Shown in pieces: positions 3,479 through 62,310 of a DNA stretch of 64,000 bases (its first letter is position 1; each line of letters opens with the position of its first letter). The notes beneath the pieces were generated by a model, which made no database searches, had not been told where the DNA came from, and saw nothing but the letters and a program-made list of their open reading frames with translations. The stretch covers positions 105,192,651 to 105,256,650 of the forward strand of contig NC_068981.1 of assembly GCF_001194135.2 (NCBI RefSeq). Direction: 5' to 3'. The DNA is from Octopus bimaculoides (taxonomy: Eukaryota). The position numbers and the translations under genes are program-made.

Positions 3479-4814
3479 TATATATATATATANNNNNNNN
3501 NNNNNNNNNNNNNNNNNNNNNNNNNNNNNNNNNNNNNNNNNNNNNNNNNNNNNNNNNNNNNNNNNNNNNNNNNNNNNNNNNNNNNNNNNNNNNNNNNNNN
3601 NNNNNNNNNNNNNNNNNNNNNNNNNNNNNNNNNNNNNNNNNNNNNNNNNNNNNNNNNNNNNNNNNNNNNNNNNNNNNNNNNNNNNNNNNNNNNNNNNNNN
3701 NNNNNNNNNNNNNNNNNNNNNNNNNNNNNNNNNNNNNNNNNNNNNNNNNNNNNNNNNNNNNNNNNNNNNNNNNNNNNNNNNNNNNNNNNNNNNNNNNNNN
3801 NNNNNNNNNNNNNNNNNNNNNNNNNNNNNNNNNNNNNNNNNNNNNNNNNNNNNNNNNNNNNNNNNNNNNNNNNNNNNNNNNNNNNNNNNNNNNNNNNNNN
3901 NNNNNNNNNNNNNNNNNNNNNNNNNNNNNNNNNNNNNNNNNNNNNNNNNNNNNNNNNNNNNNNNNNNNNNNNNNNNNNNNNNNNNNNNNNNNNNNNNNNN
4001 NNNNNNNNNNNNNNNNNNNNNNNNNNNNNNNNATATATATATATATATACAGGGTTGGCCAAAAGTCACCTGACAGTAAATCAAAACCATTTAATTCCAA
4101 GATTAAAACAAAAAATTATTTTATATGAGACTTCACTAATAAATAGACAAATGTTGAAAAACAAAATATGGTGATTTTAACTCAAAGCATTCAGTTATTA
4201 AACATTCATAATTGGAATGAATAAATAAAATTGAATATTAAGTATTTATGGAATGAACCCAGAACCATGTGGTTGGAAAGCAAGCTTCCTACCATACAGT
4301 CACATGATTTTGTTAAATTAGACACAAGACAATACATTTTTTTTCCATGGAGATTGGAAGACCTAGAGTTGACTGAACTGATCTTAGAATAATTCTGTCA
4401 CTTATTGTATTGCCTGATAAAGATAAAGAAAAGTATAAAATAGACTACTGCATACTTTGTTTTTTATCAATAATACTTGTGTGAAACAAAATTATAAATA
4501 ACATATATTTTTTAAGATGTTCAAGTATTAGCGCAGATATGGCTATTCGGTGAAAGTTTCATTAAAAAGTATCCATTTCTCTGGAATTTATGAGGCAACA
4601 AATCGGTAGGGTATTAAACTGTAGTTATATCTTTTTCAATAAAAGTTAACATTAACAGATTAGCATTGACTTCTGTTACATTTTCAAAGAATAAACGGAT
4701 TAACAATTAACGAACTTAACTTTCTGGTTAACGGATTAATGATTAACAAAGTTAACTTTCAATTATCGATGTCCACCTTTGCATATATGTATATATGTAT
4801 ATATGTATATATAT

Positions 4815-5605
4815 GGCCAATGCCAGTGTTGCATGTCCAGCCCATTTAAGAGAACCCTTGATGCGTCAGACGATATGATATGCTTGAGAAGACCTGTTGA
4901 GTCAAGTAAAACCAAAATTGTAGCTGTGGTTAGTGCCCCCTGACTGGCTCTCATTTTGGTTGCACATAAAATGCATCATCTGAACGTGGTCGATGCCAGT
5001 GACCTCTGACTGGCTCCCATGTTGGAGTCATGTAAAAAGCACCATCCGAACATGGCCAATGCCAGTGCCTCTTGACTGGCTCCTGTGCCAGTGGCACATA
5101 AAAAGCACTATCTAAACGTGATCAATGCTAGTGCCACCTGACTGGCTCCCGTACCAGTGGAACATAATAAGCACCATCCGAATGTGACTGATGCCAGTGG
5201 CCCCTGACTGGCTTCCATGTTGGTGGCACGTAAAAAGCACTATCTGAACGTGATCAATGTCAGGACCGCCTGACTGGTTCCCATACTGGTGACACGTAAA
5301 AAGCACCATCTGAATGTGGCTGATGCCAGTACCCCCTGATTGGCACCCATACTGGTGGCACATGAAAAGCACTATCTGAATGTGATCGATGCCAGGCCCA
5401 CATGACTGGCTCCTGTGCCAGTGGCACGTAAAAAGCACTCACTACAGTCTTGGAGTGGTTGGCGTTAAGAAGTGCATCCAGCTGTAGAAACATTGCCAGA
5501 TCAGGTTGGAGCCTGGTGCAGCCACTGGCTTTCCAGACCTCAGTCAAACTGTCCAATTCATGCCAGCATGGAAAACAGATGTTAAACGATGATGATGATG
5601 ACAAT
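4815..5605 (+). mobile_element. RTE LINE 3' UTR with expanded 66-bp tandem array and (GAT)n tail
   Basis: Homologous to 33957-34513, which follows an RTE ORF end. Ends CATGGAAAACAGATGTTAAACGATGATGATG. Confidence 0.8.
4942..5440. repeat. 66-bp tandem array, 8 units, alternating dimer structure
   Basis: GACTGGCT anchors at 4942, 5008, 5074, 5140, 5206, 5272, 5338, 5404. Confidence 0.9.
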
Positions 5606-7747: not shown

Positions 7748-8209
7748 CTATCAAGCAAATAAGACACAGATATGTGTTATCATTGTTTAACCCAAAGTCA
7801 GCTTCAATCAAGCAGACTTATGGTCAAAGGTATATATATCTATATATATATATATNNNNNNNNNNNNNNNNNNNNNNNNNNNNNNNNNNNNNNNNNNNNN
7901 NNNNNNNNNNNNNNNNNNNNNNNNNNNNNNNNNNNNNNNNNNNNNNNNNNNNNNNNNNNNNNNNNNNNNNNNNNNNNNNNNNNNNNNNNNNNNNNNNNNN
8001 NNNNNNNNNNNNNNNNNNNNNNNNNNNNNNNNNNNNNNNNNNNNNNNNNNNNNNNNNNNNNNNNNNNNNNNNNNNNNNNNNNNNNNNNNNNNNNNNNNNN
8101 NNNNNNNNNNNNNNNNNNNNNNNNNNNNNNNNNNNNNNNNNNNNNNNNNNNNNNNNNNNNNNNNNNNNNNNNNNNNNNNNNNNNNNNGGGGGGGGGGGGA
8201 ACACAGACA

Positions 8210-10556: not shown

Positions 10557-11345
10557 GAGCCTATACACGGTGATCTCTCACTACAAGGGGCTGCGTACAT
10601 TCCAACATTTCCTTAACCTTCAACCTAACACCCAACTTGACACATCCAAACTCCTTCATCTGGCCAAACTTGTCCTCTCACTTAACTGCTTCTCGTTCGT
10701 GGGTGATTTTTACCAGCAAATCTAGGGAGTGGCCATGGGAACGAGAATGGGCCCCAACTATGCGAACCTGTTCGTTGGCTACATTGAGGCCCAAATATTC
10801 TCAAGTTTCACTGGTCCCATTCCCGAACTATACATCCGTTATATTGACGACTGTATTGGTGCAACCTCACTCTCCTGCGAACATCTAGACTCATTCCTCT
10901 CTTTTGTCAAATCTTTCCATCCTGCCCTCCACTTCCGCACTATTTCCAACATTTCCGTCGCCTTTCTCGACATTTCGGTTAGCATTCATCCCTCCACTCT
11001 CACCACCTCCATCCATTACAAACACACAGACTCACACTCATACCTCAACTTCTCTTCCTCCCACCCTAAACACACCAAGCTCTCCATTCCCTATTCTTAA
11101 TTCCTCCGTCTATGCAGGCTCTGCAGTGACGACCATGACTTTGAGACTCAGTCTCAACTTATGGCCCGCCGTTTCATCGTATGTGGATATCCCCTCACCA
11201 CTATTCACACCGCCCTTGCAAGAGCACATTCCGTGGACCGTGCATCTGCTCTCCCCCTGCACCCACCCCACCACCCTACCTCTCCAACACACCATTCTCC
11301 GAGCTTCTCAGTGACTCCAGTCTGACCCCTCCCCTTTGCACATTA
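10548..11345 (+). mobile_element. Penelope-like element reverse transcriptase fragment (pseudogene)
   Basis: SLYTVI...LNCFSF...YQQI*GVAMGTRMGPNYANLFVGYIE...YIRYIDDC...AFLDISV...IHYKHTDSHSYLNFSSSHPKHTKLSIPYS*FLRLCRLCS, a typical PLE RT plus thumb/HTH region. Confidence 0.9.
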
Positions 11346-20765: not shown

Positions 20766-21479
20766 ACCATAAAGATTTTGTCTACCTATTTACTGTTTCT
20801 GCCTTTAGANNNNNNNNNNNNNNNNNNNNNNNNNNNNNNNNNNNNNNNNNNNNNNNNNNNNNNNNNNNNNNNNNNNNNNNNNNNNNNNNNNNNNNNNNNN
20901 NNNNNNNNNNNNNNNNNNNNNNNNNNNNNNNNNNNNNNNNNNNNNNNNNNNNNNNNNNNNNNNNNNNNNNNNNNNNNNNNNNNNNNNNNNNNNNNNNNNN
21001 NNNNNNNNNNNNNNNNNNNNNNNNNNNNNNNNNNNNNNNNNNNNNNNNNNNNNNNNNNNNNNNNNNNNNNNNNNNNNNNNNNNNNNNNNNNNNNNNNNNN
21101 NNNNNNAAATGGTTTCATCCACAACACTTGTGCTTTTCAAAGAAGTATTACTGTAAACAAGTCACCAGTTCTCATCCTCCCAATCATCTGAGATTTGATG
21201 GGGGGGGGGGGGTTAAAGTAAGATTGAGGCCCTAAACCCCTCTCCTCCACTCACTCTGTCCAATCCACTTCACTTATATCTTCCACCCTGTAACTCCAAT
21301 ACATCTTCATCAACATCTTCAGTTTCTCTCTCTCTCTCTCTTCCTTTCCTTTTTCAATTGGGGCAGAAATGTAACTCCTCCATTGCAAGACACCTGCTTC
21401 TATCCCTTTATCATATTCTAACCTCTCATCACCTGACACAAAGCACTCTCTTTAAATCCTACCCTTTCTTCAGTTGAAG

Positions 21480-21691: not shown

Positions 21692-21730
<39 letters not shown>

Positions 21731-22139
21731 NNNNNNNNNNNNNNNNNNNNNNNNNNNNNNNNNNNNNNNNNNNNNNNNNNNNNNNNNNNNNNNNNNNNNN
21801 NNNNNNNNNNNNNNNNNNNNNNNNNNNNNNNNNNNNNNNNNNNNNNNNNNNNNNNNNNNNNNNNNNNNNNNNNNNNNNNNNNNNNNNNNNNNNNNNNNNN
21901 NNNNNNNNNNNNNNNNNNNNNNNNNNNNNNNNNNNNNNNNNNNNNNNNNNNNNNNNNNNNNNNNNNNNNNNNNNNNNNNNNNNNNNNNNNNNNNNNNNNN
22001 NNNNNNNNNNNNNNNNNNNNNNNNNNNNNNNNNNNNNNNNNNNNNNNNNNNNNNNNNNNNNNNNNNNNNNNNNNNNNNNNNNNNNNNNNNNNNNNNNNNN
22101 NNNNNNNNNNNNNNNNNNNNNNNNNNNNNNNNNNNNNNN

Positions 22140-24316
22140 GGCCATAGGGTCATTTTTTTCAGTCAAAATAACTCCTAATTACGAAAAAATTCGATAAAAC
22201 TACATACATAATCATTTTCCCCTCTAATACAATCTAATTTACTCACATATATCTACACACATATATGTACCTATGGTTACCAATGACCTCATTCTAATTG
22301 GCGGGAATTGTAAGTTCACTTTCCATTTCTAACACCATCCTTCACCATGATAACAAAAAAAAAATTGTGACACATCTTTTTCAAATACGATCGACAAACA
22401 TTTATTCCCTACAAACTGTGAGTTTTTTTGAAAATCTTTTTTAAAACACATTTACTTACTACCATATATATATATACAGATAATACACTCATACATACGT
22501 ACGTACAAATAAACACATACATACAAATACCTGTTTTTTTTAATTATTTGCCGTTTCTTATCACCCTTTCCCCTTTCAATTTTACTCATACTTTCCAAGA
22601 CAATTTCTCTGTACAAGTAACTTTCACATCGACAGTCAAACATTTATTCCCTACAAACTGAGTTTTTCGAAAATATTTTTTAAAACACATTTACTTACTA
22701 CCATATATATAGAGAGAGAATACACACACACACACACACACATACATACATACATACATAGAAATACACACATACATACAAATACTTGTCAATCTTTTTC
22801 AAATACGCTCGACAGTCAAACATTTATTCCCTACAAATTGTGAGTTCTTTCAAAATCTTTTTTAAAACACATTTACTTACTACCATATATATAGAGAGAG
22901 AGAGAATACACACATACATACAAATACCTGTCAATCTTTTTCAAATACAATCGAGAGTCAAACATTTATTCCCTACAAACTGTTTTTTGAAAATCTTTTT
23001 AAAAACACATTTACTTACTACCATATATATATAAGGAGAGAATACACACTAATACATATAAACATACATACAAATACACACATACATACAAATACCTGTC
23101 AGTTTATTTATTTATTTGCAGCTTCTTATCACCCTTTCCCCACTTCAATTTTACGCATACTTTCCCAGACAACTTCTCTGTACAAGTAACTTTCACCCTT
23201 TCTTTGGGACATGAAATGCCACCGAAAAAGAGAAGTCGCCATACCGCGTCAGCACTGGCACTAAAGGCAATTAGAGCAAATGAGTTCTCCAACCAAACTC
23301 CTTTTAGACTTTCACAGAGTGCCTTACATTCAGCAGAATGCCAAGCTGCTGAAAGTTTCCAACAGCGCACTGTATGCCTAGCCAAAATGGCTTCATACGA
23401 TGCTGCTTCCAGGGCTACAGAGGGCCCAGAACAAAGAGCGACTTGCCTGGCTAAAAACGCTGCTGCTAATGCTACTTCCAGGGCTTCAGAGGGCCAGGAA
23501 CAAAGGCCACTCGACTGACTACAAACGCTGCAGCTACTGCTGCTTCCAGGTCTTCCGAACGTTTGGAAAAACGGACGACTCACCTTGCTACGAACGCTGC
23601 CCCTATGACTGCTTCCATGGCTTCTGAAGATGCAGATGGGCGGTCCATGACCATTGAAAATGTGGCTTCTGCTACTNNNNNNNNNNNNNNNNNNNNNNNN
23701 NNNNNNNNCTGCGCGACCTTCCCACTACTAACACGGGCAACGTTCTATGTTGCAGCGGAACAGTCGATCGCGAGAAGCTGCATGCGGTGTGACGAGTCCC
23801 AACAGCCTTTACTGGCACCTACAGGCGTTCAAGTATGAGCCCAACTTTAATTACTCCATCTGCGCTGACATAAATATAGGGGGAGTGGGCTTCAATTGCC
23901 TCTTCTGCAATGCTAAAAAGTGGGCTGGGTACCCATGATTAATCCCCCTCTTTCCTCCATAGGGCATCAAATTCTGTTTTCACAGAGCATGAAGTTTTGT
24001 AACAGCACGTCCGCTGCCATTGGTGGAAAAGGAATATACTGTATTCACCTGTAAACGTTTTACACACCCTTCCAGGTCTACCTACCAAATTTTTACAATT
24101 GTGAGAATGATAACACAGCTTTTCAGGGCCACCTCACATTCTATTGTTACCCACTTCTGAGAGTGTTGCAATGCTCTTTGCAGGGTTTTCTATCCAGTTG
24201 CAAATCGATTGGTTGGGTGTAAACTTATATCAGTATTTGCCTCAATAATCATAATTGAGTAGAATCGAGTACTTTAAAGCAATTAAGCCCCGAGCAATGC
24301 CAGGCACTTCTGCTAG
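22140..24316 (+). mobile_element. Non-autonomous Helitron (Rep N-terminal remnant fused to the 3' end)
   Basis: MPPKKRSR...RATEGPEQRATCLAKNAAA repeats and AFKYEPNFNYS....NIGGVGFNCLFCNAKKW are typical of the Helitron N-terminus. 3' hairpin-like CCCGAGCAATGCCAGG, then CTAG|T at 24313-24317. The 5' end is probably in the N gap. Confidence 0.82.
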
Positions 24317-25009: not shown

Positions 25010-25317
25010 ATTGTTATACTTGGAAATGGTTACATTTTGCCAATTAAACATACGCATTATATATACTGTTTTTACTTCAGCTTTATTATTATTATTTTTT
25101 GTTTTTCTCAAAGCTCTTTCATCACACGTGTCTCTTGTCCTGCCAGCCGAACAAGAGGAGACACGTGGGATAAAGAGTTGCTGAAGAGGTCACAGGATGT
25201 GTGACGAAAGAGCTTCAACAAAGAAACTAAAATAATAATAATAAAGCTGAAGTGAAGGCCAAACATATAGTGCATGTGTTTAATTGGCAAAATATGACCA
25301 TCCCTAAGTATAACAAT
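25010..25317. mobile_element. ~310-bp palindromic element carrying a hammerhead-like core (Penelope pLTR-like)
   Basis: Arms ATTGTTATACTT...TTTTGCCAATTAAACA...CTTCAGCTTTATTATTATTATT...AAGCTCTTTC.TCAC match in reverse complement at roughly three quarters identity (by eye). Confidence 0.75.
25177..25219 (+). ncRNA. Minimal type-I hammerhead ribozyme-like motif
   Basis: GTTG-CTGAAGA-G-GTCACA(GGATG)TGTGAC-GAAA-GAGCT-T-CAAC: stem I 4 bp, stem II 6 bp, extra purine after A9, very short stem III. Confidence 0.6.
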
Positions 25318-27607: not shown

Positions 27608-28636
27608 ACAGAATCTTTTATACTGCCTCACAAGAAGAGGATTTTTGAAAATTATATGCAGATCATTATATTGACAATAATTAGCAGAGGAAAGCTAGTA
27701 TTTTATTTCTTCATTCTAGATTGCTTTGAAATTTTGTATATGATGAGGCTGATACTTTTTTAACAGGAATGTATTTCACTGTTTAACACGATTTTTGTCT
27801 TTGGGTAGCAACTGTTATTTCCCATTTGCTTACTACTAAAACGTATAAAAAATGGCTAATACTTCCTTGAAACTTTACTTTTGTTATATTCATTCAAACC
27901 CCAAAGAGTCCCTCTCAACACATGGCTATGATGCAACCCCACTACTCCTGCTCATGATCAGAGATGCACATACTGTCAGCCACTAAGAAACATGCTCAAG
28001 TGGTTACGGTCAAGCAATTGACAAGCAAATTTGTGGTACTGAGCAGAATATTTGCTCTAATGATATTTCTGCTTCAGCAACTTAGCACTGAATCTCTCTG
28101 AAATGTAATGGAAAATAGGTCAGTTTCAAAACATAGATGTCCAGGTCACAAAACCAAAGTTTGAAGGGAATAACAGCCATTTCTTTTGATTTCTAGATAA
28201 AAGCAAATAGGAAATAACACTTATTGACCAAAGACAAAAAAAAAAAAAAAATTTGTTACAGTGTTATTTATTTCAACACTATTTCTGTTTCATATTTTCA
28301 GCTCTTCTTTGTAATACAATCAATGAAATATTTGACATTATTTAACAAAATAATGTTTATATTTATTATAATGTTCAATACATTGTGTCAGTGTCCAAGG
28401 TATGCCACTGCATTATATGGAATAATATTGTTTGAAATGCTATGCTATTGTATGATATCGTAAGTAATGTAAATTGAAGTGTGTTCAACTGATGAGGAGC
28501 ATGATATCAGGTATGCAATATTAAGAAAAATAATAAGCATGGAAGACAAAATATATATTACAGTACTATATTTAAGAGATGAGGAATTGTGTACATTATT
28601 TACACTTGACAGATATTTGTCCTCATCTTGTTTGTT

Positions 28637-28682
28637 GTTAACACGTTTCGGCTGATATACCCTCCAGCCTTCATCAGGTGTC
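28637..28682 (-). ncRNA. Hammerhead motif, left-arm copy, cleavage site/stem I disrupted
   Basis: GACAC-CTGATGA-A-GGCTG...CAGCC-GAAACGTGTT; a 2-nt loss relative to the right arm removes the UH plus stem I register. Confidence 0.5.
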
Positions 28683-28952
28683 TTGAGGAAATTTCGAACC
28701 TGGATTCTCATTCCTAAGGTATTTTTTGATATTATTATTATTATTATTCAGGTCACTGCCTGGAATCGAACTCGGAATCTTGCGGTTAGTAGCCTGCACT
28801 CTTCACCACTACGCCATATGCCCGGGTATATGGCATAGTGGTTAAGAGCGTGGGCTACTAACCGCAAGATTCCGGGCAGTGACCTGAATAATAATAATAA
28901 TAATATCAAAAAATACCTTAGGAATGAGAATCCAGGTTCGAAATTTCCTCAA

Positions 28953-28998
28953 GACACCTGATGAAGGCTGGAGGGTATATCAGCCGAAATGTTGTGTT
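28953..28998 (+). ncRNA. Minimal type-I hammerhead motif, right-arm copy
   Basis: GACAC-CTGATGA-A-GGCTG(GAGGGTATAT)CAGCC-GAAA-TG-T-T-GTGTT: stem I 5 bp (one G-U), stem II 5 bp, 1-bp stem III (ancestral ACGT palindrome inferred), GUU site. Confidence 0.68.
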
Positions 28999-29059
28999 AA
29001 CAACAAACAAGATGAGGACAAATATCTGTCAAGTGTAAATAATGTAAAATATATATTAC

Positions 29060-29156
29060 CTGTATCCGTTTCATCCTCATGTAACCATTTTGGACTTTGT
29101 TTCTGTTTAAAAAGTTTATTCACATCCTCCGAATCAGCAGATATATCAGAGCCAGA
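29060..29156 (-). CDS. CEP162: CEP162-like exon, 97 bp, phase 0->1: SGSDISADSEDVNKLFKQKQSPKWLHEDETDT
   Basis: Acceptor ttgttgttgtag, donor CAG|gtaata; resembles the vertebrate SDDSFENS...PWWITEDD exon in content and phases. Confidence 0.82.
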
Positions 29157-29159
29157 CTA

Positions 29160-30258
29160 CAACAACAACAACAACAATAATAATAATAATAATAATAATA
29201 ATTTCAAATTTTGGCACATAATTAGCAATTTCAGTGGGAGAGGTAAGTTGATTACAGATCTCAACTGGTACTTATTTTATCAACTTCAAAAGGTTGAAAG
29301 GCAAAGTCAACTTTGGCAGGATTTGAACTCAGAACATAAAGACAGACAAAATGCCACTAAGCACTTTGTCCAGTGTGCTAATGATTCTGCCAACTCTCCA
29401 CCTTAATAATAATAACAATAATAATAATCCGTTTTACTATAGGCACTAAGCCTGAAATTTTTGCAGGTGGGGGAAAGTTGATTACATCGACCCTAGTATT
29501 TGACTAGTGCTTAATTTATCAACCCCGAAAGAATAAAAGGCAAAGATGACTTTGGTGAAATTTCAACTCAGAAAATAAAGATGTACAAAATACTGCTAAG
29601 CATTTTAACCAGCATGCTAACAATTCTACTAGCTCACCATCTTTTTAGTGATAACAAGAGTTTCAAATTTTTGCACAAGGCCAGGAATTTCGGGAGAGCA
29701 GTTAAATTGATTACATCGACCCCAGTGATAAACTGGTACTTGTTTTAGCACCCACTACACTCTCTGAGTGGTTGGCATTAGGAAGGGCATCCAGCTGTAG
29801 AAACTCTGCCAAATTAGATTGGAGCCTGGTGTTGCCATCCGGTTTCACCAGTCCTCAGTCAAATCGTCCAACCCATGCTAGCATGGAAAGCGGACGTTAA
29901 ACGATGATGATGATGAAAAGAATGAAAGGCAAAGTCAACTTCAGTGAAATTTGAATTCAGAACATAAAACCAGATGAAATGTTGCTAAGCATTTGTCTGG
30001 CATGCTAATAATTTTGCCAGCTCACCACTTAAAATAATAATAACAATCCTTTCTACTATAGACACGAAGCCTGAAATTTTGAGGGATGGAGCTAGTCAAT
30101 TACATCGACTTCAGTGCTCAACTGGTACTTATTTCATTGATCCCAAAAGGAAGAAAGGCAAAATCAACCACAGCAGAATTTGAACCCAGAATATACAGAG
30201 CCAGAAGAAATGCCGTTAAGCATTTTGGCTGCTCATGATTCTGCCAGCTCACCGTCTT
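29160..30258 (-). mobile_element. Four head-to-tail SINE family B copies; the third is interrupted by a plus-strand RTE tail (29750-29915)
   Basis: Heads (G.TGAG.TGGCAGAA/TC) end near 29404, 29640, 30031 and 30258; each is followed by the family-B body and an (ATT)n tail. Confidence 0.85.
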
Positions 30259-31586: not shown

Positions 31587-33204
31587 GTTTACATCATCAG
31601 AGTTAAATAATACACGAACAAAAGTATCAGCATCACACTTAGAGAAAATATGTTTGTTTCTTTTAATACTTATAAATTATTTAAACATAAAAGCAATGAA
31701 GTCGTTTGATTTATCGACTTTTACTGTGCTATACACACTAAAGTACACCGCATTCTCCCTTGCAAAAAAGTCGTCATATTGTAAACAAGTTGCAACCACG
31801 CAACGACCGCTTATGTTATTGAAGAGGCATTTATTTATTTTTAATTGCTTTAATATATATTTAAGTTTCTGCTGATTTGAAATGCAGAAAAAAATATTAT
31901 ATTAAAACGTTCAGTAAATATGGAATTATAGTAGGAAACATTTAAAAATATATTTATGTCCCATTGAACATTTATGAGAAAACTATCGATCTTAATGCGA
32001 TAACGCTTACAACAAAAACAAATATGAGCGGGGTAGGGGGGTAAGATGTGTTAAGACGTGATTTGTTCAGTTAGAAAACACACGTCTCTTAATTTCCAGT
32101 TTAATTCCAGGCGAAATTGACTATCACTTGAGTCCTTGCAGAGATGGTTATGTGAATTTAGTGTAGGATATCTAGGAATTGGTACATAGTAAGTATGACA
32201 AAGAGAAGATGGTTTCTATTAACTTGTTAGTTTTCAAGAGTAAAAACCGTTCTTGTTATTGTTACTGTTGTTCTTTTCGTTATTTAGCTTTGCCATGACC
32301 ATCCTAGTATTTTCAAGAATTGTATATTTAGGACTGAATTATGCGATCTTTTCTTTTTAAGACGTGAAGATGTGGTTTGAGGAGGATGTTGCTGCTATTT
32401 GTAGTAAATCAAATGAACATGTAGAGATGACAACACATTTGTAAGATAGGGGTTGGATGAATATTGACCCATTACCAGAATTGTTTTCTTTGGGATGTGA
32501 TCAAGATAGTGTATGGTAATCAGCAACACTGTTCCAAATAAGCAAGCAGTATTCAAGGGTAGTTCTTATATGAGCTTTTGAGATGACCAGAAACTTTGTA
32601 TAGACAGAGGTGTCATATACCAATTTTCCCACCTCACTACACAGTTATTGCATTTCTGTTGAAGTTCACTAGTCTTTTTTGAGCTGCATGGGTTTCACAG
32701 AGAGCAGACAGAGCAGTGCCCCATAGTTTGGTTTTTATACATTCACAAGTGAATTAGAGCAGAAATATTTTATTACTCTCATAAGTTGAACCTAACTATG
32801 ATCTCTTTTAACAGTGATCACAATTTTCTGTTTATTCCCTTTTTTATAATATGTTGACAGTTATTATAAAGCATTAGATAGAATGTGTTGCAGTTCATTT
32901 CACTTCTCTGTGCTCTCAGTTCAAATCTGACAGGTCAATGTCAGTAAATAAAGTACCAGCTCAGAGTTGGTGCAGCCCTCCATCCTGCTGGATGTTATAC
33001 TGAGGCAAGGTTGAAAGAGCTGAGAAGCTGTCTGTTCATAGCTATATTGAAACCTAAATGTTTAGCATGAAGATTCCCTTCATTGAAACTGCTAAATGTT
33101 GGTTTGTTGAATGTCATCAAGGAAGAATATCCTTTGAAAAACCCTAACTAACCCTAATTTGAAAATGAACCAAAGTCAGAACAACTTGTGAAAGCATTTT
33201 CTGA

Positions 33205-34513
33205 AGAACTGCCATGCTACACAGCAGTGAAACATAGGCCATGACTGCTGAGGACATATGTAGGCTTGAAAGAAATGAAGCTAGTATGATCCGCTGGATG
33301 TGTAATGTCAGTGTGCATACACGACAGAGTGTAAGTGCCCTGAGAGAAAAGTTGGACATAAGAAGCATCAGATGTGGTGTGCAAGTGAGACGACTGCGCT
33401 GGTATGGTCATGTGTTATGTATGGATGAGGACAGCTCTGTGAGAAAGTGCCACACCCTAACTGGAAGAGGTAGACCCAAGAAGACATGGGATGAGGTGGT
33501 GAAGCATGACCTTTGAACGTTGGGCCTTACAGAGGCCGAGACCTTTGGAGATATGCTGTGATAGAGAAGACCCAGCAACTAAAGTGAGATCACAGCTTTA
33601 GTAGAAAGTGGGTTATACATCTTTAGATTGTATACCTGTCTTCCTACTATAAAATTAAGAATATAACGGAACGCTGAACTCCAGACTATCAACTTAAACA
33701 ACATTTATTCAGGTGGTAAATATATACATCTTTAGTTCTTGTTGTTACAGCTTCTGTGTGTATGAGCATAGTTGTTGGGACGTTGTTCTGTAGTTGTGCG
33801 CGAGCTGTCGAGTGTAAGTCCGAAAGATGTAGAGACAGCTTTAATACGTCCATGCTCAATTGCTGGCCAGCGAGAAAGAGAATGAATTGAACGGGAAACG
33901 CTTGCTTGTTTAATTCTACGCATGCGTAAGACTACGCATGCGCAGGCGTTACTACACAGCCATGGTCAACGCCAGTGTTGCTTATCCGACCCATTTAAAA
34001 GTACCCTTGATGCATCAGGCGATATGATATGCTTGAGAAGACCTGTTGAGTCAAGTAAAACCAAAATCATAGCTGTAGCCAGTGTCCCCTGACTGGCCCC
34101 TATTCCTGTGGCACATAAAATGCATCATCCAAACATGGTTGATGCCAGTGCTCTCTGACTGGCTCCCATGCCAGTGGCATGTAAAAAGCACCATCCAAAC
34201 CTGGTCAATGCCAGGTCCGCCTGACTGGCTCCCATGCCAACGGCACATAAAAAGCACTATCCAAACGTGGCCAATGCCAGTGCCCCCTGCTGGTGGCACA
34301 TAAAAGGCACTATCTGACTGGCTCCTGTGCCACTGGCATGTAAAAAGCATCCACTACACTCTTGGAGTGGTTGGTATTAGGAAAGGCATCCAGCTGTAAA
34401 AATGTTGCCAGATCAGATTAGAGCCTGATGCAGCCTCTGGCTTTCCAGACCTCCGTCAAACTGTCCAACCCATACCAGCATGGAAAATGGACGTTAAACA
34501 ATGATGATGATGA
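33205..34513 (+). mobile_element. RTE LINE 3' end (thumb, 3' UTR with 66-bp units, tail) split by a solo LTR
   Basis: MTAEDICRLERNEASMIRWMCNV...RRLRWYGHVLCMDED...GRGRPKKTWDEVVKHDL; tail GGACGTTAAACAATGATGATG. Confidence 0.9.
33597..33956 (-). mobile_element. Solo LTR (Gypsy-like), 360 bp
   Basis: Ends TGTAGTA...TACTA(A/C)A, AATAAA on the minus strand, 4-bp TSD cagc/cagc; paralogous to 49668-50103. Confidence 0.8.
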
Positions 34514-58010: not shown

Positions 58011-59149
58011 CTATATATATATATATATATATAAAGTCAGTAAATAGTGGGGTTGTGTTAACCGCACGTGGAAAAATAATAGGAAAATGAAAAATAATAA
58101 TAAGGCAGAATGCTAAAATGAAAGCATATTTTAATATAGATTTCTAACCGGCTTTCATTGTATGGCAAATTTTCAAGAAGAGGAAGATTGAAAATGTTTT
58201 TTACAAAAAAGTAAAAAAGGAAAAAAATAATATATAAAAAAAATAATATATAAANNNNNNNNNNNNNNNNNNNNNNNNNNNNNNNNNNNNNNNNNNNNNN
58301 NNNNNNNNNNNNNNNNNNNNNNNNNNNNNNNNNNNNNNNNNNNNNNNNNNNNNNNNNNNNNNNNNNNNNNNNNNNNNNNNNNNNNNNNNNNNNNNNNNNN
58401 NNNNNNNNNNNNNNNNNNNNNNNNNNNNNNNNNNNNNNNNNNNNNNNNNNNNNNNNNNNNNNNNNNNNNNNNNNNNNNNNNNNNNNNNNNNNNNNNNNNN
58501 NNNNNNNNNNNNNNNNNNNNNNNNNNNNNNNNNNNNNNNNNNNNNNNNNNNNNNNNNNNNNNNNNNNNNNNNNNNNNNNNNNNNNNNNNNNNNNNNNNNN
58601 NNNNNNNNNNNNNNNNNNNNNNNNNNNNNNNNNNNNNNNNNNNNNNNNNNNNNNNNNNNNNNNNNNNNNNNNNNNNNNNNNNNNNNNNNNNNNNNNNNNN
58701 NNNNNNNNNNNNNNNNNNNNNNNNNNNNNNNNNNNNNNNNNNNNNNNNNNNNNNNNNNNNNNNNNNNNNNNNNNNNNNNNNNNNNNNNNNNNNNNNNNNN
58801 NNNNNNNNNNNNNNNNNNNNNNNNNNNNNNNNNNNNNNNNNNNNNNNNNNNNNNNNNNNNNNNNNNTATATATATATATACGTATGTATGTATATATATG
58901 TGGTACTTTTTTAATAGATTTTTCATATTACCTTCTATAGAATTTAGTTGTCATGTTCCAGCACAAAATCATATGTTATAGCTGACACTGCAAATGTGTG
59001 GATGGTGCAGATAGTGTTCCTGGTAGTGTGATGAATTTTTAATATTTGAGTCTGTCAAGTTATTCATTTCTTGTTCTTGTTTGGACATTTTTCATGCACA
59101 GTTTTACTTTCATCTCTGCCCCAAAATTTGTATTGAAATTTCAAATCAT

Positions 59150-59930
59150 CTGTTTCTCTGCTTCATTTTATTATTAGTTTCTTGCACTTCTTCAGCCCAA
59201 AGGACATCTTAATGTCTTTGCTAAACTATTTATACAACTGCAACACACAGTTTTAGGCCATCCATGAGAATGAAAGGGTGTCTGAGCCTGATCCTCCCTT
59301 TCCATATAGTATCATAAGTTGATTTTTATTTTTAATTAGTGAACTTTAATTTAACAAGCATAAACTCAAATGAAGAAGAAAAGTGCAATGCAAATACTAT
59401 TCTCTTGAAATATCCTACTAGATATTTCTGAGAGGCTCAGCTTACAACTACAGTTTTGTTAATGAGGGTAAGAACTGTCTGCCATGCCTTGTTATTTTAA
59501 TGACATTCACCATATTATCCTCACCATTGATGTACTTAAACATTTTGATAATACAATCATGCAAGACTGAATCCTAAGCTTTCCTTGTAGCTGATTTAGG
59601 GGCATGACAGGTTCTTTTTCATGCCTTGACATCATCCAGTACTATCTTGAGAACAAGAACCTGGTTAATTGCTCCAAACAACTATTGCATACATCCCTTA
59701 TGCTTTACAGGAATAACATTTTTTAATATATGCTCAGTTATTCTATTGAATAGTATTTTAGAGATTACCAGCTGACAAATGTTGATGCAATTGTTACATG
59801 AATCATCTGCTGGTCTTTTCTTGGGGATCATTCTTGTAATACTTGTAAGGAGCTATTGAAGCACTTAGTCTGGGCTCTTTAAGAAGGTGTTGAAGATGGC
59901 TGTGCAGTACATCAAATGACTACCTTTATA
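59150..59930 (-). mobile_element. R4/Dong-type reverse transcriptase remnant
   Basis: MIPKK...ISKILFNRITEHI..., FILMDGLKL (YMDDLKL-like) and FSKDIKMSFGLKKC. Confidence 0.7.
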
Positions 59931-60499
59931 AATTTCAGATATTATCAATATCAGAACATTTCCAGTTTTTTATGTTAACCTCATATCAAGTATTGCAGTA
60001 CTGGAAGAGATGAGTTTTTTTATGTTTTATTGTTTTGTTTTATTTTTTTTCCAGTTTCTGTTGTTGCTATGAACTCTTCTTGCTAGATATTGTTTTCATT
60101 ATATTTAAGTTTATTTTAAAAAATGAGTTTCCATAGTGTGTCATTGTTTTCTTACAATATTTCAAGGAACTGCATAAATATAAGGATTAGCTGTGTATGA
60201 ATGATTAATTCAACAAAATATATTAACTAATAAGTATTGTATTGATGTCCCTGATAGGTGTAAGGTAGTATTGTTAAATATTATTTGAAATGTACTTTGT
60301 ATTCTATCATTGTCCTCAAAACATTAGCTTATATAGATAGGTAGGTAGGTAGGTAGACAGGCAGGCATAACGAAGGTGGCTATAATCAATATAAAACCAA
60401 AAAGGAAAAATTCAGTTGTCACTAATTGTGACTGACAGTGCAGAGTAGCACCTACATTGTTAGGAATAAGAGCTAAAAAGTCACCCCACAGTGAGTGAG

Positions 60500-60551
60500 A
60501 TCATCATACTAGTCTAGTTTCACTTTGAATTAAAAGCTCATCAGTGATGAC
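60500..60551 (-). ncRNA. Canonical type-I hammerhead ribozyme motif, 52 nt
   Basis: GTCATCA-CTGATGA-GCTTT(TAATTC)AAAGT-GAAA-CTA(GAC)TAGT-A-TGATGAT: stem I 7 bp, stem II 5 bp, stem III 4 bp, full core, GUA site, predicted cleavage between 60507 and 60506. Confidence 0.85.
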
Positions 60552-61269
60552 TACTTCATCGCTGAATAGTTTGGCTAAATCCCAACTGTCAGTATATAGT
60601 ATTTACAATATGAATCGGACTTAGTCCTCAGTAAGGTTTTCAGAGTGTAAGTTCAAATCATTTGACCATTACAAAGTATTTTCTATATTAAGCATCTCTG
60701 TATCTCATCTGTTGACTCTATAAAGTTTATAACCATTCAATGTAGAAGACTGGAGAGAGCTACTGTAGCTGTTCGAAATATTCAAGTTTTATATATTTCA
60801 GAAACTTATGAGATTTAAATTTCCAATGGCTGAGGATTAGCATCATACTTTAGAACTTAAAGTGCCAAGGAATTTGAATCAAACTGTTTTGATCCATACA
60901 TGATCTCAAGGGTGGATGGATGTCCTCTAACTTCTTTTACCATCCAATCACTAGTGGACCCTACACCCCTATGCTCTTTTGATAGCTGTGGCTGTTATGG
61001 GAAGCATTATGTCCAAGCTTGAATTCATACAAAACAAAGTAAATGCATTTTTTTTCTTTTTTTTCATGTTTGAAATTAAGGATTTCTATGCTTCAAAATT
61101 ATATTCTGAGAGAAAGCAATGAAAATTTATGAAGAGGACACATCAATTATTAAGCATATAAAATTTCATCTAAAACTCTACAACAATAACATCTTAAATC
61201 GAATTTGAAAAAATGTTTTCAAAAAATCAAACACTATTTTCCAAACAACCTAATATATGACGTAGAGAG

Positions 61270-61460
61270 CAAGTATTGGTTTCAAATTTTAGCACAAGGC
61301 AAGCAATTTCTGAGAAGGTTCGGTAGGTTGATTACATCAACTCTAGTACTCGACTGGCATTTAATTCATTGGTCCCCTAAGGGATGAAAGGCAAAATCAA
61401 TCTCGGTAGAATTTGAACTCAGAACATAAAGATGGACAAAACACCACTAACAATTTCGCT
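61270..61460 (-). mobile_element. SINE family B
   Basis: GGATGAAAGGCAAAATCAATCTCGGTAGAATTTGAACTCAGAAC. Confidence 0.7.
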
Positions 61461-61574
61461 CTGCAAGTATTGAACAACAAAGTTCTCTGAATTAGTAGCA
61501 AAGGAGGAATAAATCTCACAGTTGCTGTATCTTATATTATGTATTAAAGATCTCTGAAACATAAGAGTAATCAT

Positions 61575-61720
61575 CATCATAATTTAATGTCCATTTTCCA
61601 TTCTGACATGGGTTGGGTAGTTTGACAGGAACTGGCAAGCCAGAAGATTATATCTGGCTCCACTGTCTGTTTTGGAATGTTTATATGGCTGGATTCCCTT
61701 CCTAACACCAACCACCTTAC
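61575..61720 (-). mobile_element. RTE-type 3' tail
   Basis: CATCATCAT..TTTAATGTCCATTTTCCAT...GGGTTGG..GTTTGACAGG. Confidence 0.65.
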
Positions 61721-61884: not shown

Positions 61885-62310
61885 CTAGCTGGCCCCATGC
61901 CATCAAAAATGACGGCTAATTGTAGTATTTTATATATAAATAAGGTACAAAACCAAGTTTTTAGTTTAATAATTCTTTTATTACCAAATTTCTTGTGAAA
62001 AATCTATCTGCAGCTAACATCCCTTGACTGCTTGTTTCCTTTAAAAGAATTTTAAAGTTTTCCTTCCTTCTTGTACGATTTAAGGCTACATAAAGTTGGC
62101 CATGACTAAATACGGGAGCTGGCAAGTAAATACAAACTTTTTTGAAGTGACATTTCCTTTCAATTGCACTCTCCATTACTATAACCAACCTAAACTCATA
62201 TGGCCTAAAGCCACAAAAAGCTGTCCTTGCCTTATAGTTGATGTTGTAAAAACTCCCTATTAAAAATTTATTACATAAATTTCTTAATATAAATAAATTA
62301 GGCACATGTA
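61885..62310 (-). mobile_element. Helitron 3' end with PIF1 helicase C-terminus
   Basis: FKKVCIYLPAPVFSHGQLYVALNR...TRNLVIKELLN*; hairpin GCCGTC-ATTTTT-GATGGC, then CTAG|T. Confidence 0.9.

What the first reader, a model, noticed from the sequence alone, without database searches (positions are those of the whole stretch)
60500..60551. Near-perfect standalone 52-nt hammerhead ribozyme in otherwise decayed DNA
Seen in sequence: all core positions (C3 U4 G5 A6 U7 G8 A9, G12 A13 A14, A15.1-U16.1, A17) and three intact helices (7, 5 and 4 bp). The only deviation is G10.1-U11.1 in place of G-C. It should fold as a monomer. There is no tandem partner, ORF or recognisable repeat around it, while neighbouring TE fossils are heavily mutated. 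Inference: either a recent insertion from a fourth HHR family or a conserved, domesticated intronic/intergenic ribozyme, comparable to the conserved intronic HHRs of amniotes.
Basis: partly seen in the sequence, partly recalled or inferred. Interest (0 to 1): 0.9.

Follow-up and report, generated by a model that had tools for sequence, protein, structure and literature searches.

The report
Orphan hammerhead-like ribozyme motif
A 52-base stretch really does spell a textbook hammerhead self-cleaving RNA, but it is a lone, weakly folding copy with no relatives I could find, so it is either a leftover from a mobile element or a rare look-alike, and nothing shows it to be a working host ribozyme.

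Summary
Minus strand 60551..60500 reads as a type I hammerhead with every core position canonical. It has helices of 7, 5 and 4 bp, a G10.1·U11.1 wobble, and a predicted cleavage site at 60507/60506. It is rare but not decisive. No hit came from 7,559 composition-matched decoy cores in this window. Simulated sequence gave about 2e-5 equally good motifs per window, roughly one per 2.7 Gb for type I alone. Support stops there:
- **Rfam:** no match above noise (14.5-16.6 bits against thresholds of 48-52).
- **Folding:** the hammerhead fold is 1.4% of the ensemble alone and about 4e-6 with flanks. Control hammerheads gave 9-35% alone. An upstream 9-bp hairpin sequesters helix I and C3-A6.
- **Atypical features:** G·U at 10.1/11.1, an A/U-rich helix II and A17 are what chance or decay would give in this AT-rich, CpG-depleted DNA.
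- **Context:** there is no second copy, repeat, palindrome or ORF around it.

Copy number and orthology could not be tested because no cephalopod DNA was reachable. Two Penelope-type minimal hammerheads elsewhere in the window show the genome carries hammerhead-bearing retroelements. My estimates are retroelement-derived copy about 0.45, chance about 0.40 and domesticated ribozyme about 0.05.

The parts
60500..60551 (-). Whole 52-nt type I hammerhead-like motif
   Evidence: Read directly. Only hit of the strict type I descriptor in the window.
60545..60551 (-). Helix I, 5' strand (GUCAUCA)
   Evidence: Pairs with 60500-60506, giving 6 Watson-Crick pairs plus a terminal G·U. Flanks do not extend the helix (direct reading).
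60538..60544 (-). Core C3 U4 G5 A6 U7 G8 A9 (CUGAUGA)
   Evidence: Direct reading.
60522..60537 (-). Helix II (GCUUU/AAAGU, with G10.1·U11.1 at its base) and 6-nt loop 2 (UAAUUC)
   Evidence: Direct reading. The hairpin alone is worth only -0.6 kcal/mol.
60519..60521 (-). Core G12 A13 A14
   Evidence: Direct reading.
60508..60518 (-). Helix III (A15.1-U16.1 plus 3 more bp) with GAC triloop; an 11-nt near-palindrome ACUAGACUAGU
   Evidence: Direct reading. Not stable as a hairpin on its own (0 kcal/mol). The self-duplex of two copies is worth -9.5 kcal/mol.
60506..60507 (-). Predicted cleavage site: 3' of A17 (60507), 5' of U1.1 (60506)
   Evidence: Follows from hammerhead numbering applied to the sequence. 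Not tested experimentally.
60500..60506 (-). Helix I, 3' strand (UGAUGAU)
   Evidence: Direct reading.
60541..60565 (-). Competing 9-bp hairpin (UCAG-C-GAUGA / UCAUC-A-CUGA). It sequesters most of the helix I 5' strand and core C3-A6, and it is transcribed before the 3' half of the motif.
   Evidence: Present in the MFE and the centroid of the 116-nt fold. The hammerhead fraction falls to 1e-5 or below once flanks are included.

Best explanation
It is a solitary copy of a type I hammerhead that came from a hammerhead-bearing retroelement (a retrozyme or Penelope-like lineage). It now sits as an orphan in non-coding, transposon-rich DNA and is not maintained by the host.

If the minus strand is transcribed, the RNA could in principle cleave itself between A17 (60507) and U1.1 (60506) by the usual hammerhead transesterification. 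I expect it to be at best a slow, high-Mg2+ 'minimal' ribozyme, for four reasons:
- helices II and III are A/U-rich and weak;
- no helix I / loop 2 tertiary contact is recognisable;
- an upstream hairpin competes for helix I and part of the core;
- no second copy is nearby to form the dimeric helix III that many animal hammerheads use.

The G10.1·U11.1 wobble is read as a C-to-T change at the C11.1-G12 CpG. What is shown: the motif, its rarity and its poor predicted folding. What is inferred: the retroelement origin, the CpG decay and the weak activity.
For: - The motif has a perfect core and three helices.
- It is rare under null models: 0 of 7,559 decoy cores in the real window and about 2e-5 per window in Markov simulations.
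- The same window holds two further hammerhead motifs of Penelope type, at 25177-25219 and 28953-28998. Each has a bulge between positions 9 and 10.1, a 6-bp helix II, G10.1-C11.1 and a short helix I. Decoys predict 0.028 such hits per window. Both lie in significant inverted-repeat structures.
- A Penelope-like RT fossil lies at 10729-11100. Its homologues carry PF26215/PF00078, and one sits next to a GIY-YIG gene.
- So hammerhead-bearing retroelements are dense in this genome, which raises the prior far above the chance rate.
- Rfam also missed those two motifs, so the Rfam negative for the candidate is not decisive.
- Literature: most dispersed animal hammerheads are type I and sit in retrozymes or Penelope-like elements, often as single motifs from truncated copies (PMC4209133, PMC7229834). 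A squid genome has 235 Rfam Hammerhead_1 loci (PMC6962438).
- CpG observed/expected is 0.41 here, so C11.1 to U is the most likely single decay step.
- Helix III is near-palindromic (dimer duplex -9.5 kcal/mol), as in animal type I hammerheads.
Against: - No paralogue, tandem partner, terminal repeat, target-site duplication or palindromic context identifies a mobile element around it.
- Its architecture (no bulge, 5-bp helix II, 4-bp helix III, 7-bp helix I) differs from the Penelope-type motifs in the same window.
- No Rfam hammerhead model scores above 16.6 bits.
- The features outside the descriptor are atypical of real families. The G10.1-C11.1 pair, which PMC4209133 uses as an argument against randomness, is not met. 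Helix II is A/U-rich, and position 17 is A.
- If it were as old as the neighbouring transposon fossils, an intact core with all 16 base pairs would be unlikely to survive.
- Orphan motifs that cannot be grouped into a family are normally discarded in the field (PMC4209133, Methods).
Confidence: 0.45

Rival explanations
1. It is a chance look-alike. AT-rich, transposon-derived DNA with local TGATGA/TCATCA and CTAG repeats happens to satisfy the hammerhead descriptor. There is no ribozyme ancestry and no function.
For: - About one equally good type I motif is expected per 2.7 Gb of order-3 Markov sequence (3 in 132,000 windows). More are expected if types II and III are accepted, and the window belongs to a scan of unknown size.
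- Every feature not demanded by the descriptor is what composition predicts. TG outnumbers CG five to one (4451 against 871), so a U11.1 before G12 is the likelier random partner of G10.1. Helix II has 3 A-U pairs, 1 G·U and only 1 G-C. Position 17 is A.
- The hammerhead fold is thermodynamically marginal: z-score +0.15, 1.4% of the ensemble alone and about 4e-6 with flanks.
- Rfam models give noise-level scores.
- There is no family, partner or element structure around it.
Against: - The per-window probability is only about 2e-5 to 1e-4.
- The genome demonstrably carries real hammerhead elements at high density, with two more in this window. The prior for a derived copy is therefore orders of magnitude above the chance rate.
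- The motif is unusually compact (loops of 6 and 3 nt), unlike most chance hits in the simulations.
Confidence: 0.4
2. It is a domesticated host ribozyme, conserved at this locus in cephalopods and acting in cis on an intronic or intergenic transcript, comparable to the amniote HH9/HH10 intronic hammerheads.
For: The core and all helices are intact while the neighbouring transposon fossils are full of stops. It is a single copy in the window. On the bare 52-mer, the best Rfam alignment is to the HH9 model across the full three-helix architecture, but at only 14.5 bits against a threshold of 52.
Against:
- No exon or host gene was seen in the window. All recognisable ORFs are transposon fragments.
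- Predicted folding is poor and a hairpin competes with it.
- The conserved G10.1-C11.1 pair is lost, and no tertiary-contact loops are recognisable.
- There is no sequence similarity to HH9/HH10 beyond the universal core.
Confidence: 0.05
3. The region is another small RNA, for example a C/D-box snoRNA. UGAUGA and CUGA boxes lie in and next to the motif, and there is a SNORD28-like hit at 60587-60666(-).
For: There are weak Rfam hits: SNORD28 at 28.4 bits (threshold 50), and SNORD95, SNORD31 and SNORD59 at 12-16 bits. The plus strand contains GUGAUGA.
Against: All the hits are far below their thresholds. The SNORD28 E-value is 1.5 at window scale. By direct reading there is no properly placed D box with a terminal stem on either strand. 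CUGAUGA inevitably contains both box-like strings.
Confidence: 0.02

Closest known systems
Canonical type I hammerheads of animal non-LTR retrozymes and satellite repeats (Rfam RF00163 Hammerhead_1; newt, Schistosoma, mussel, coral, axolotl)
   Same: It shares the type I topology (helix I open) and the identical catalytic core. Helix I is 6-7 bp and helix II 4-5 bp. Helix III is short and near-palindromic, so it could extend in a dimer. The context has low GC (PMC4209133, PMC7229834).
   Different: It is not in a tandem repeat of 170-400 bp, and no second copy is nearby. It has G10.1·U11.1 instead of G-C. No loop 1 / loop 2 contact nucleotides are recognisable. Helix III is longer (4 bp) than the usual 1-2 bp. 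Hammerhead_1 does not appear among the hits at E <= 10.
Minimal hammerheads of Penelope-like elements (Cervera and de la Pena 2014)
   Same: They occur dispersed as single motifs from truncated elements and have low or no monomeric activity. They are present in this same window (25177-25219 and 28953-28998), together with a Penelope-like RT fossil.
   Different: [quoted passage not shown] The candidate has none of these. It is not in a pseudo-LTR or inverted-repeat arrangement. The RT fossil 0.6 kb downstream looks LINE-like by eye and gave no Pfam hit.
Conserved intronic hammerheads of amniotes (Rfam RF02275 HH9, RF02277 HH10)
   Same: They are single-copy type I hammerheads in non-coding host DNA. 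The HH9 model aligns across all three helices and the core.
   Different: The score is 14.5 bits against a threshold of 52, and only the universal core matches. No host gene, intron or conservation has been shown. HH9/HH10 have G/C-rich helices and the canonical tertiary contacts.

Membership tests
Hammerhead ribozyme (any type) | Conserved core C3 U4 G5 A6 N7 G8 A9 ... G12 A13 A14 ... A15.1-U16.1, H17 | tested here: met
   All positions were read directly and recovered by the descriptor scan. N7 = U and H17 = A.
Hammerhead ribozyme (any type) | Three helices around the core forming a three-way junction | tested here: met
   The helices are 7, 5 and 4 bp. The structure evaluates to -5.8 kcal/mol.
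Hammerhead ribozyme (any type) | G10.1-C11.1 pair at the base of helix II (near-universal in natural hammerheads; PMC4209133) | tested here: not met
   It is G10.1·U11.1 (60537/60522). G10.1 itself is kept. This could be CpG decay (CpG observed/expected 0.41) or a composition effect.
Hammerhead ribozyme (any type) | The hammerhead fold is the dominant or a well-populated structure of the RNA | tested here: not met
   It is not the MFE. It takes 1.4% of the ensemble alone and about 4e-6 with 40-nt flanks, against 9-35% and 0.7-6.5% for seven control hammerheads. A competing hairpin lies at 60565-60541.
Hammerhead ribozyme (any type) | Site-specific, core-dependent self-cleavage 3' of position 17 | not testable with these tools
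   This needs in vitro transcription and cleavage, and mapping of RNA ends.
Hammerhead ribozyme (any type) | Match to a curated covariance model at its gathering score | tested here: not met
   There are no hits at gathering thresholds. The best scores are Hammerhead_3 at 16.6 bits (threshold 48.5) and HH9 at 14.5 bits (threshold 52). Rfam also missed the two Penelope-type motifs in the window, so this test is insensitive to new families.
Animal retrozyme / satellite type I hammerhead | Embedded in head-to-tail repeats of about 170-400 bp, or a second motif nearby for dimeric action | tested here: not met
   No tandem repeat covers the region. No similar sequence occurs in the window. No partial second unit is present.
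Animal retrozyme / satellite type I hammerhead | Membership of a multi-copy consensus family with covariation | not testable with these tools
Penelope-like-element minimal hammerhead | Extra nucleotide between 9 and 10.1, long helix II, short helix I, vestigial helix III, location in a pseudo-LTR or inverted pair | tested here: not met
   The architecture is 7/5/4 bp without a bulge. There is no palindromic context. The two other motifs in the window do meet these features.
Domesticated conserved hammerhead (HH9/HH10-like) | Orthologous conservation at a syntenic host locus, usually intronic | not testable with these tools
   No cephalopod genomes are in the searchable DNA collections, and no host exon is recognisable in the window.

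The most novel reading that the evidence does not exclude
The motif is a single-copy hammerhead retained by the host at this locus across octopods or coleoids. That would be an invertebrate counterpart of the amniote HH9/HH10 intronic ribozymes. Its activity could be gated by the upstream competing hairpin, so that cleavage depends on transcription kinetics or on a factor that opens that hairpin.
Probability: 0.04. Interest if true: 0.6.

Novelty: new member of a known kind. Interest (0 to 1): 0.2.

Why it matters
If it is real and retroelement-derived, it adds one more hammerhead variant to the many already known in animal genomes. It would also hint at a non-Penelope-type hammerhead family in this (probably cephalopod) genome. 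That is of modest interest.

It would matter more if orthologues showed host conservation. Domesticated hammerheads are known only from amniotes, and their function is still unclear.

The practical lesson concerns method. A perfect core with three helices is expected about once per large genome by chance. Orphan motifs therefore need copy-number, covariation or cleavage evidence before they are called ribozymes.

Tried and rejected
- **Rfam.** I searched at gathering thresholds and at E <= 10 on the whole window, on 351 nt and on the bare 52-mer. Only noise-level hammerhead hits appeared. The mir-297/466-type hits are microsatellite artefacts.
- **snoRNA reading.** I rejected it (see the rival explanations).
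- **Self-similarity.** BLASTN of 60000-61200 against the window found no copy. The repeat finder on 59900-61450 found no target-site duplication, terminal repeat or partial second unit, only low-complexity pairs.
- **Palindrome test.** A test centred on helix III was not significant, with 24-98 of 300 shuffles scoring as high. The 9-nt inverted pair ACUGACAGU/ACUGUCAGU at about 60594-60586 and 60439-60431 is therefore treated as chance.
- **Flanking translations.** Three-frame translations of 58930-61700(-) gave no Pfam family. The LINE-like RT fossil at about 59990-59000 is recognised by eye only.
- **Reaching other assemblies through proteins.** Exact look-up of 10 neighbouring ORFs found none in the collection. 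Homologues of the helicase-like ORF 61961-62305 reach 75% identity at best (over 45% of the query) and none is from this locus. Homologues of the Penelope-like RT reach 67% identity at best. Two fetched loci share only the RT with the window.
- **Metagenome scan.** The pattern for helix II plus the core gave 32 loci. They are unrelated microbial or tandem-repeat hammerheads, and none shares helix I or helix III with the candidate. I used them only as folding controls.
- **ARAGORN.** It found no tRNA-like SINE head.

Full report
**What is there.** The minus strand from 60551 to 60500 reads GUCAUCA-CUGAUGA-GCUUU-UAAUUC-AAAGU-GAA-ACUA-GAC-UAGU-A-UGAUGAU. In hammerhead numbering this gives:
- helix I of 7 bp (six Watson-Crick pairs plus a terminal G·U);
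- the C3-A9 box;
- helix II of 5 bp, whose first pair is G10.1·U11.1, closed by a 6-nt loop;
- G12 A13 A14;
- helix III of 4 bp beginning with A15.1-U16.1 and closed by a GAC triloop;
- A17.

The open helix is helix I, so the topology is type I. The scissile bond would lie between 60507 and 60506. My own descriptor scan of both strands returns exactly this one hit.

**Is it more than chance?** I used three null models.
- I counted all three-way junctions in the real window with the same junction-strand lengths and at least 7/5/4 bp. There are 227, many of them in microsatellites. Multiplying by the empirical frequencies of the core strings gives an upper estimate of about 1.5e-4 per window.
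- I scanned the real window with 7,559 decoy cores, which are permutations of the core strings with matched composition. They gave 135 relaxed hits. None had a fold energy at or below -4 kcal/mol, and the best was -3.3. The candidate scores -5.8.
- I simulated order-3 Markov sequence trained on the window. In 42,000 windows plus 90,000 windows, three motifs with a perfect core reached -5.8 kcal/mol or better. Two reached at least 7/5/4 bp.

The rate is therefore about 2e-5 per 64-kb window. That is about one per 2.7 Gb for type I alone, and a few per genome if types II and III are also accepted. The motif is a real statistical outlier for one window. It is not an outlier for a genome-scale scan.

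**Tests that could have added support but did not.**
- *Rfam.* Rfam 15 gives nothing at gathering thresholds and no hammerhead hit at E <= 10 over the whole window. On 351 nt the best hit is Hammerhead_3 at 16.6 bits (threshold 48.5). On the bare 52-mer it is HH9 at 14.5 bits (threshold 52). The HH9 alignment respects the three helices and the core but matches nothing else. This negative has limited weight, because Rfam also missed two other hammerhead motifs in the window (described below).
- *Thermodynamics.* The MFE of the 52-mer (-7.0 kcal/mol) is not the hammerhead fold, and its z-score against shuffles is +0.15. The hammerhead structure evaluates to -5.8 kcal/mol. Helix II alone is worth -0.6, and helix III alone is not stable. 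The three helices together hold 1.4% of the ensemble for the isolated 52-mer and 1e-5 to 1e-6 once 20-80 nt of natural flank are added.
- *Folding controls.* I ran the same calculation on seven clear hammerheads found in metagenome contigs. Their hammerhead structure is worth -12 to -25 kcal/mol and equals or nearly equals the MFE. It holds 9-35% of the ensemble alone and 0.7-6.5% with flanks.
- *Cause of the collapse in context.* A 9-bp hairpin at 60565-60541 pairs the 5' strand of helix I and C3-A6 with upstream sequence. It would be transcribed first.

A dimeric helix III is possible in principle (self-duplex -9.5 kcal/mol), but there is no second copy.

**Features outside the descriptor.** Workers in the field argue against randomness using four points: family membership with covariation, the conserved G10.1-C11.1 pair, a palindromic helix III or loop 3, and conserved loop contacts. 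Motifs that cannot be grouped into a family are discarded (PMC4209133).

Here G10.1-C11.1 is not met. Helix II has one G-C pair, one G·U and three A-U pairs. Position 17 is A. Helix I ends after 7 bp with no recognisable internal loop. Only the near-palindromic helix III fits.

The window is strongly CpG-depleted (observed/expected 0.41, with TG and CA at about 1.28). This cuts both ways. C11.1-G12 is a CpG, so C to U is the most likely single decay step of a genuine hammerhead. But TG outnumbers CG five to one, so U11.1 is also what chance would most often place before G12.

**Context.** No tandem repeat covers the locus. No other sequence in the window resembles 60000-61200. No target-site duplication, terminal repeat or partial second unit is visible. 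The region is not part of a palindrome. ORFs overlapping it are 32 aa or shorter, and ARAGORN finds no tRNA-like sequence.

By eye, the neighbours are transposon fossils:
- a stop-riddled LINE-like RT fragment from about 59990 to 59000 on the same strand, preceded by an A-rich stretch, although Pfam detected nothing there;
- a SINE-like segment at about 61410-61270 that I recognise from memory as cephalopod-like, which is a lead and not a test;
- a Pif1/Helitron-like helicase fragment at 61961-62305, whose homologues carry PF13538, PF21530 and PF02689.

Every recognisable ORF in the window is a transposon fragment. I saw no host exon, so 'intronic' cannot be assessed.

**The genome does carry hammerhead elements.** I ran a relaxed descriptor modelled on the published minimal hammerhead: CUGANGA, an optional extra nucleotide before helix II, and a very short helix III. 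It finds three motifs in the window, against 0.028 expected from 719 decoys. One is the candidate. The other two are:
- 25177-25219(+): guug-CUGAAGA-g-gucaca...ugugac-GAA-agagcu-U-caac;
- 28953-28998(+): gacac-CUGAUGA-a-ggcugg...ucagcc-GAA-augu-U-guguu.

Both have the extra nucleotide between 9 and 10.1, a 6-bp helix II with G10.1-C11.1, a short helix I and a vestigial helix III. That is the Penelope-like-element architecture (PMC4209133).

Both also sit in significant inverted-repeat structures. Palindrome scores are 124 and 366 against about 20 for shuffles, and the arms are 84% and 97% identical. PMC8557442 describes this arrangement for Penelope-like insertions.

A Penelope-like RT fossil lies at 10729-11100(+). 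Its homologues carry PF26215 and PF00078, and one of them has a GIY-YIG gene beside it.

A squid genome was reported to contain 235 Rfam Hammerhead_1 loci (PMC6962438). Hammerhead-derived sequences therefore appear far denser in this genome than the chance rate, judging from the two extra motifs in this one window and the count reported for a squid genome. This is the main argument that the candidate is derived from a real hammerhead. Against that, the candidate shares none of the family-specific traits of its neighbours and has no element structure around it.

**What could not be done.** The decisive data are copy number in the source genome and the state of the orthologous locus in related species. 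None of the DNA collections available holds cephalopod genomes.
- Ten neighbouring ORFs are not in the protein collection.
- The helicase-like ORF has no near-identical relative.
- The RT homologues come from unrelated assemblies that share only the RT at 67-69% nucleotide identity.
- A metagenome scan for the core plus this helix II returned 32 loci. None has the candidate's helix I or III.

**Verdict.** I put about 0.45 on a retroelement-derived orphan copy of unknown age. A recent insertion from an active fourth family is a minor part of that. I put about 0.40 on a chance look-alike, about 0.05 on a host-conserved ribozyme and about 0.02 on another small RNA.

Under all readings but the third, the locus is ordinary for an animal genome rich in hammerhead-bearing retroelements.

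Noticed in passing
window 25177-25219 (+): This is a Penelope-type minimal hammerhead motif: guug-CUGAAGA-g-gucaca-ggaug-ugugac-GAA-agagcu-U-caac. It lies near the centre of an inverted repeat (25199-25256 against 25127-25071, 84% identical). Rfam does not detect it.
   Followed up: partly
window 28592-29046, motif at 28953-28998 (+), partner at 28640-28682 (-): A 157-nt inverted duplication (97.5% identical arms) surrounds a tRNA-like-looking centre at about 28825. The right arm carries an intact Penelope-type minimal hammerhead (gacac-CUGAUGA-a-ggcugg...ucagcc-GAA-augu-U-guguu). The left arm has the same core and helix II, but its 3' part reads GAAACGUGUU, so U16.1/H17 are not in register. 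ORFs 28445-28711(-) and 28924-29406(+) are artefacts of this repeat.
   Followed up: partly
window 10729-11314 (+): This is a Penelope-like reverse-transcriptase fossil (...RYIDDCIG...FLDISV...HYKHTDSHSYL...). It has 123 homologues at up to 67% identity, carrying PF26215 (HTH_animal) and PF00078. One fetched homologue locus (L034) has a GIY-YIG gene next to it.
   Followed up: partly
window 33201-33232 (+): A second CUGANGA-helix II-GAAA half-motif (CUGAAGA-acugc...gcagu-GAAA) lacks a proper A15.1-U16.1 helix III. It lies just upstream of a LINE RT C-terminal ORF (33241-33516) and is probably chance.
   Followed up: no
window 60587-60666 (-): A SNORD28-like match scores 28.4 bits (threshold 50; E = 1.5 at window scale), 35 nt upstream of the motif. 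Its C box is imperfect and its D box overlaps the terminal stem, so I treat it as noise.
   Followed up: partly
window 60586-60594 and 60431-60439 (-): A perfect 9-nt inverted pair (ACUGACAGU / ACUGUCAGU) brackets the motif almost symmetrically about the helix III loop. It is not significant against shuffles.
   Followed up: yes
window 4932-5438 and 34078-34286: Arrays of a 66-bp tandem repeat (consensus AGTGCCCCCTGACTGGCTCCCATGCTGGTGGCACATAAAAAGCACCATCTGAACGTGACCAATGCC) occur at two places in the window. They generate spurious long ORFs. Their family is not identified.
   Followed up: no
window, several places (e.g. about 1030-1270, 3490-4030, 7860-8200, 20810-21110, 21730-22140, 58260-58860): Runs of N total 2,545 bases and are often flanked by (TA)n or (CA)n microsatellites. 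These are assembly gaps typical of a short-read draft. One lies 1.6 kb from the motif.
   Followed up: no
whole window: CpG depletion is strong (observed/expected 0.41, with TG and CA at about 1.28), which implies germline methylation of this transposon-rich region. The mir-297/466/1277-type Rfam hits at 49.0-49.2 kb and elsewhere are (TA/CA)n microsatellite artefacts.
   Followed up: partly
loci L001, L008, L009, L016, L018 (metagenome contigs): A hammerhead family (catttgttacaaat-CUGAUGA-GCUUUUGAAAUAAAGC-GAAAC-ttac) repeats head to tail every ~500 bp in L008, which is retrozyme-like. It is unrelated to the candidate beyond helix II composition.
   Followed up: no
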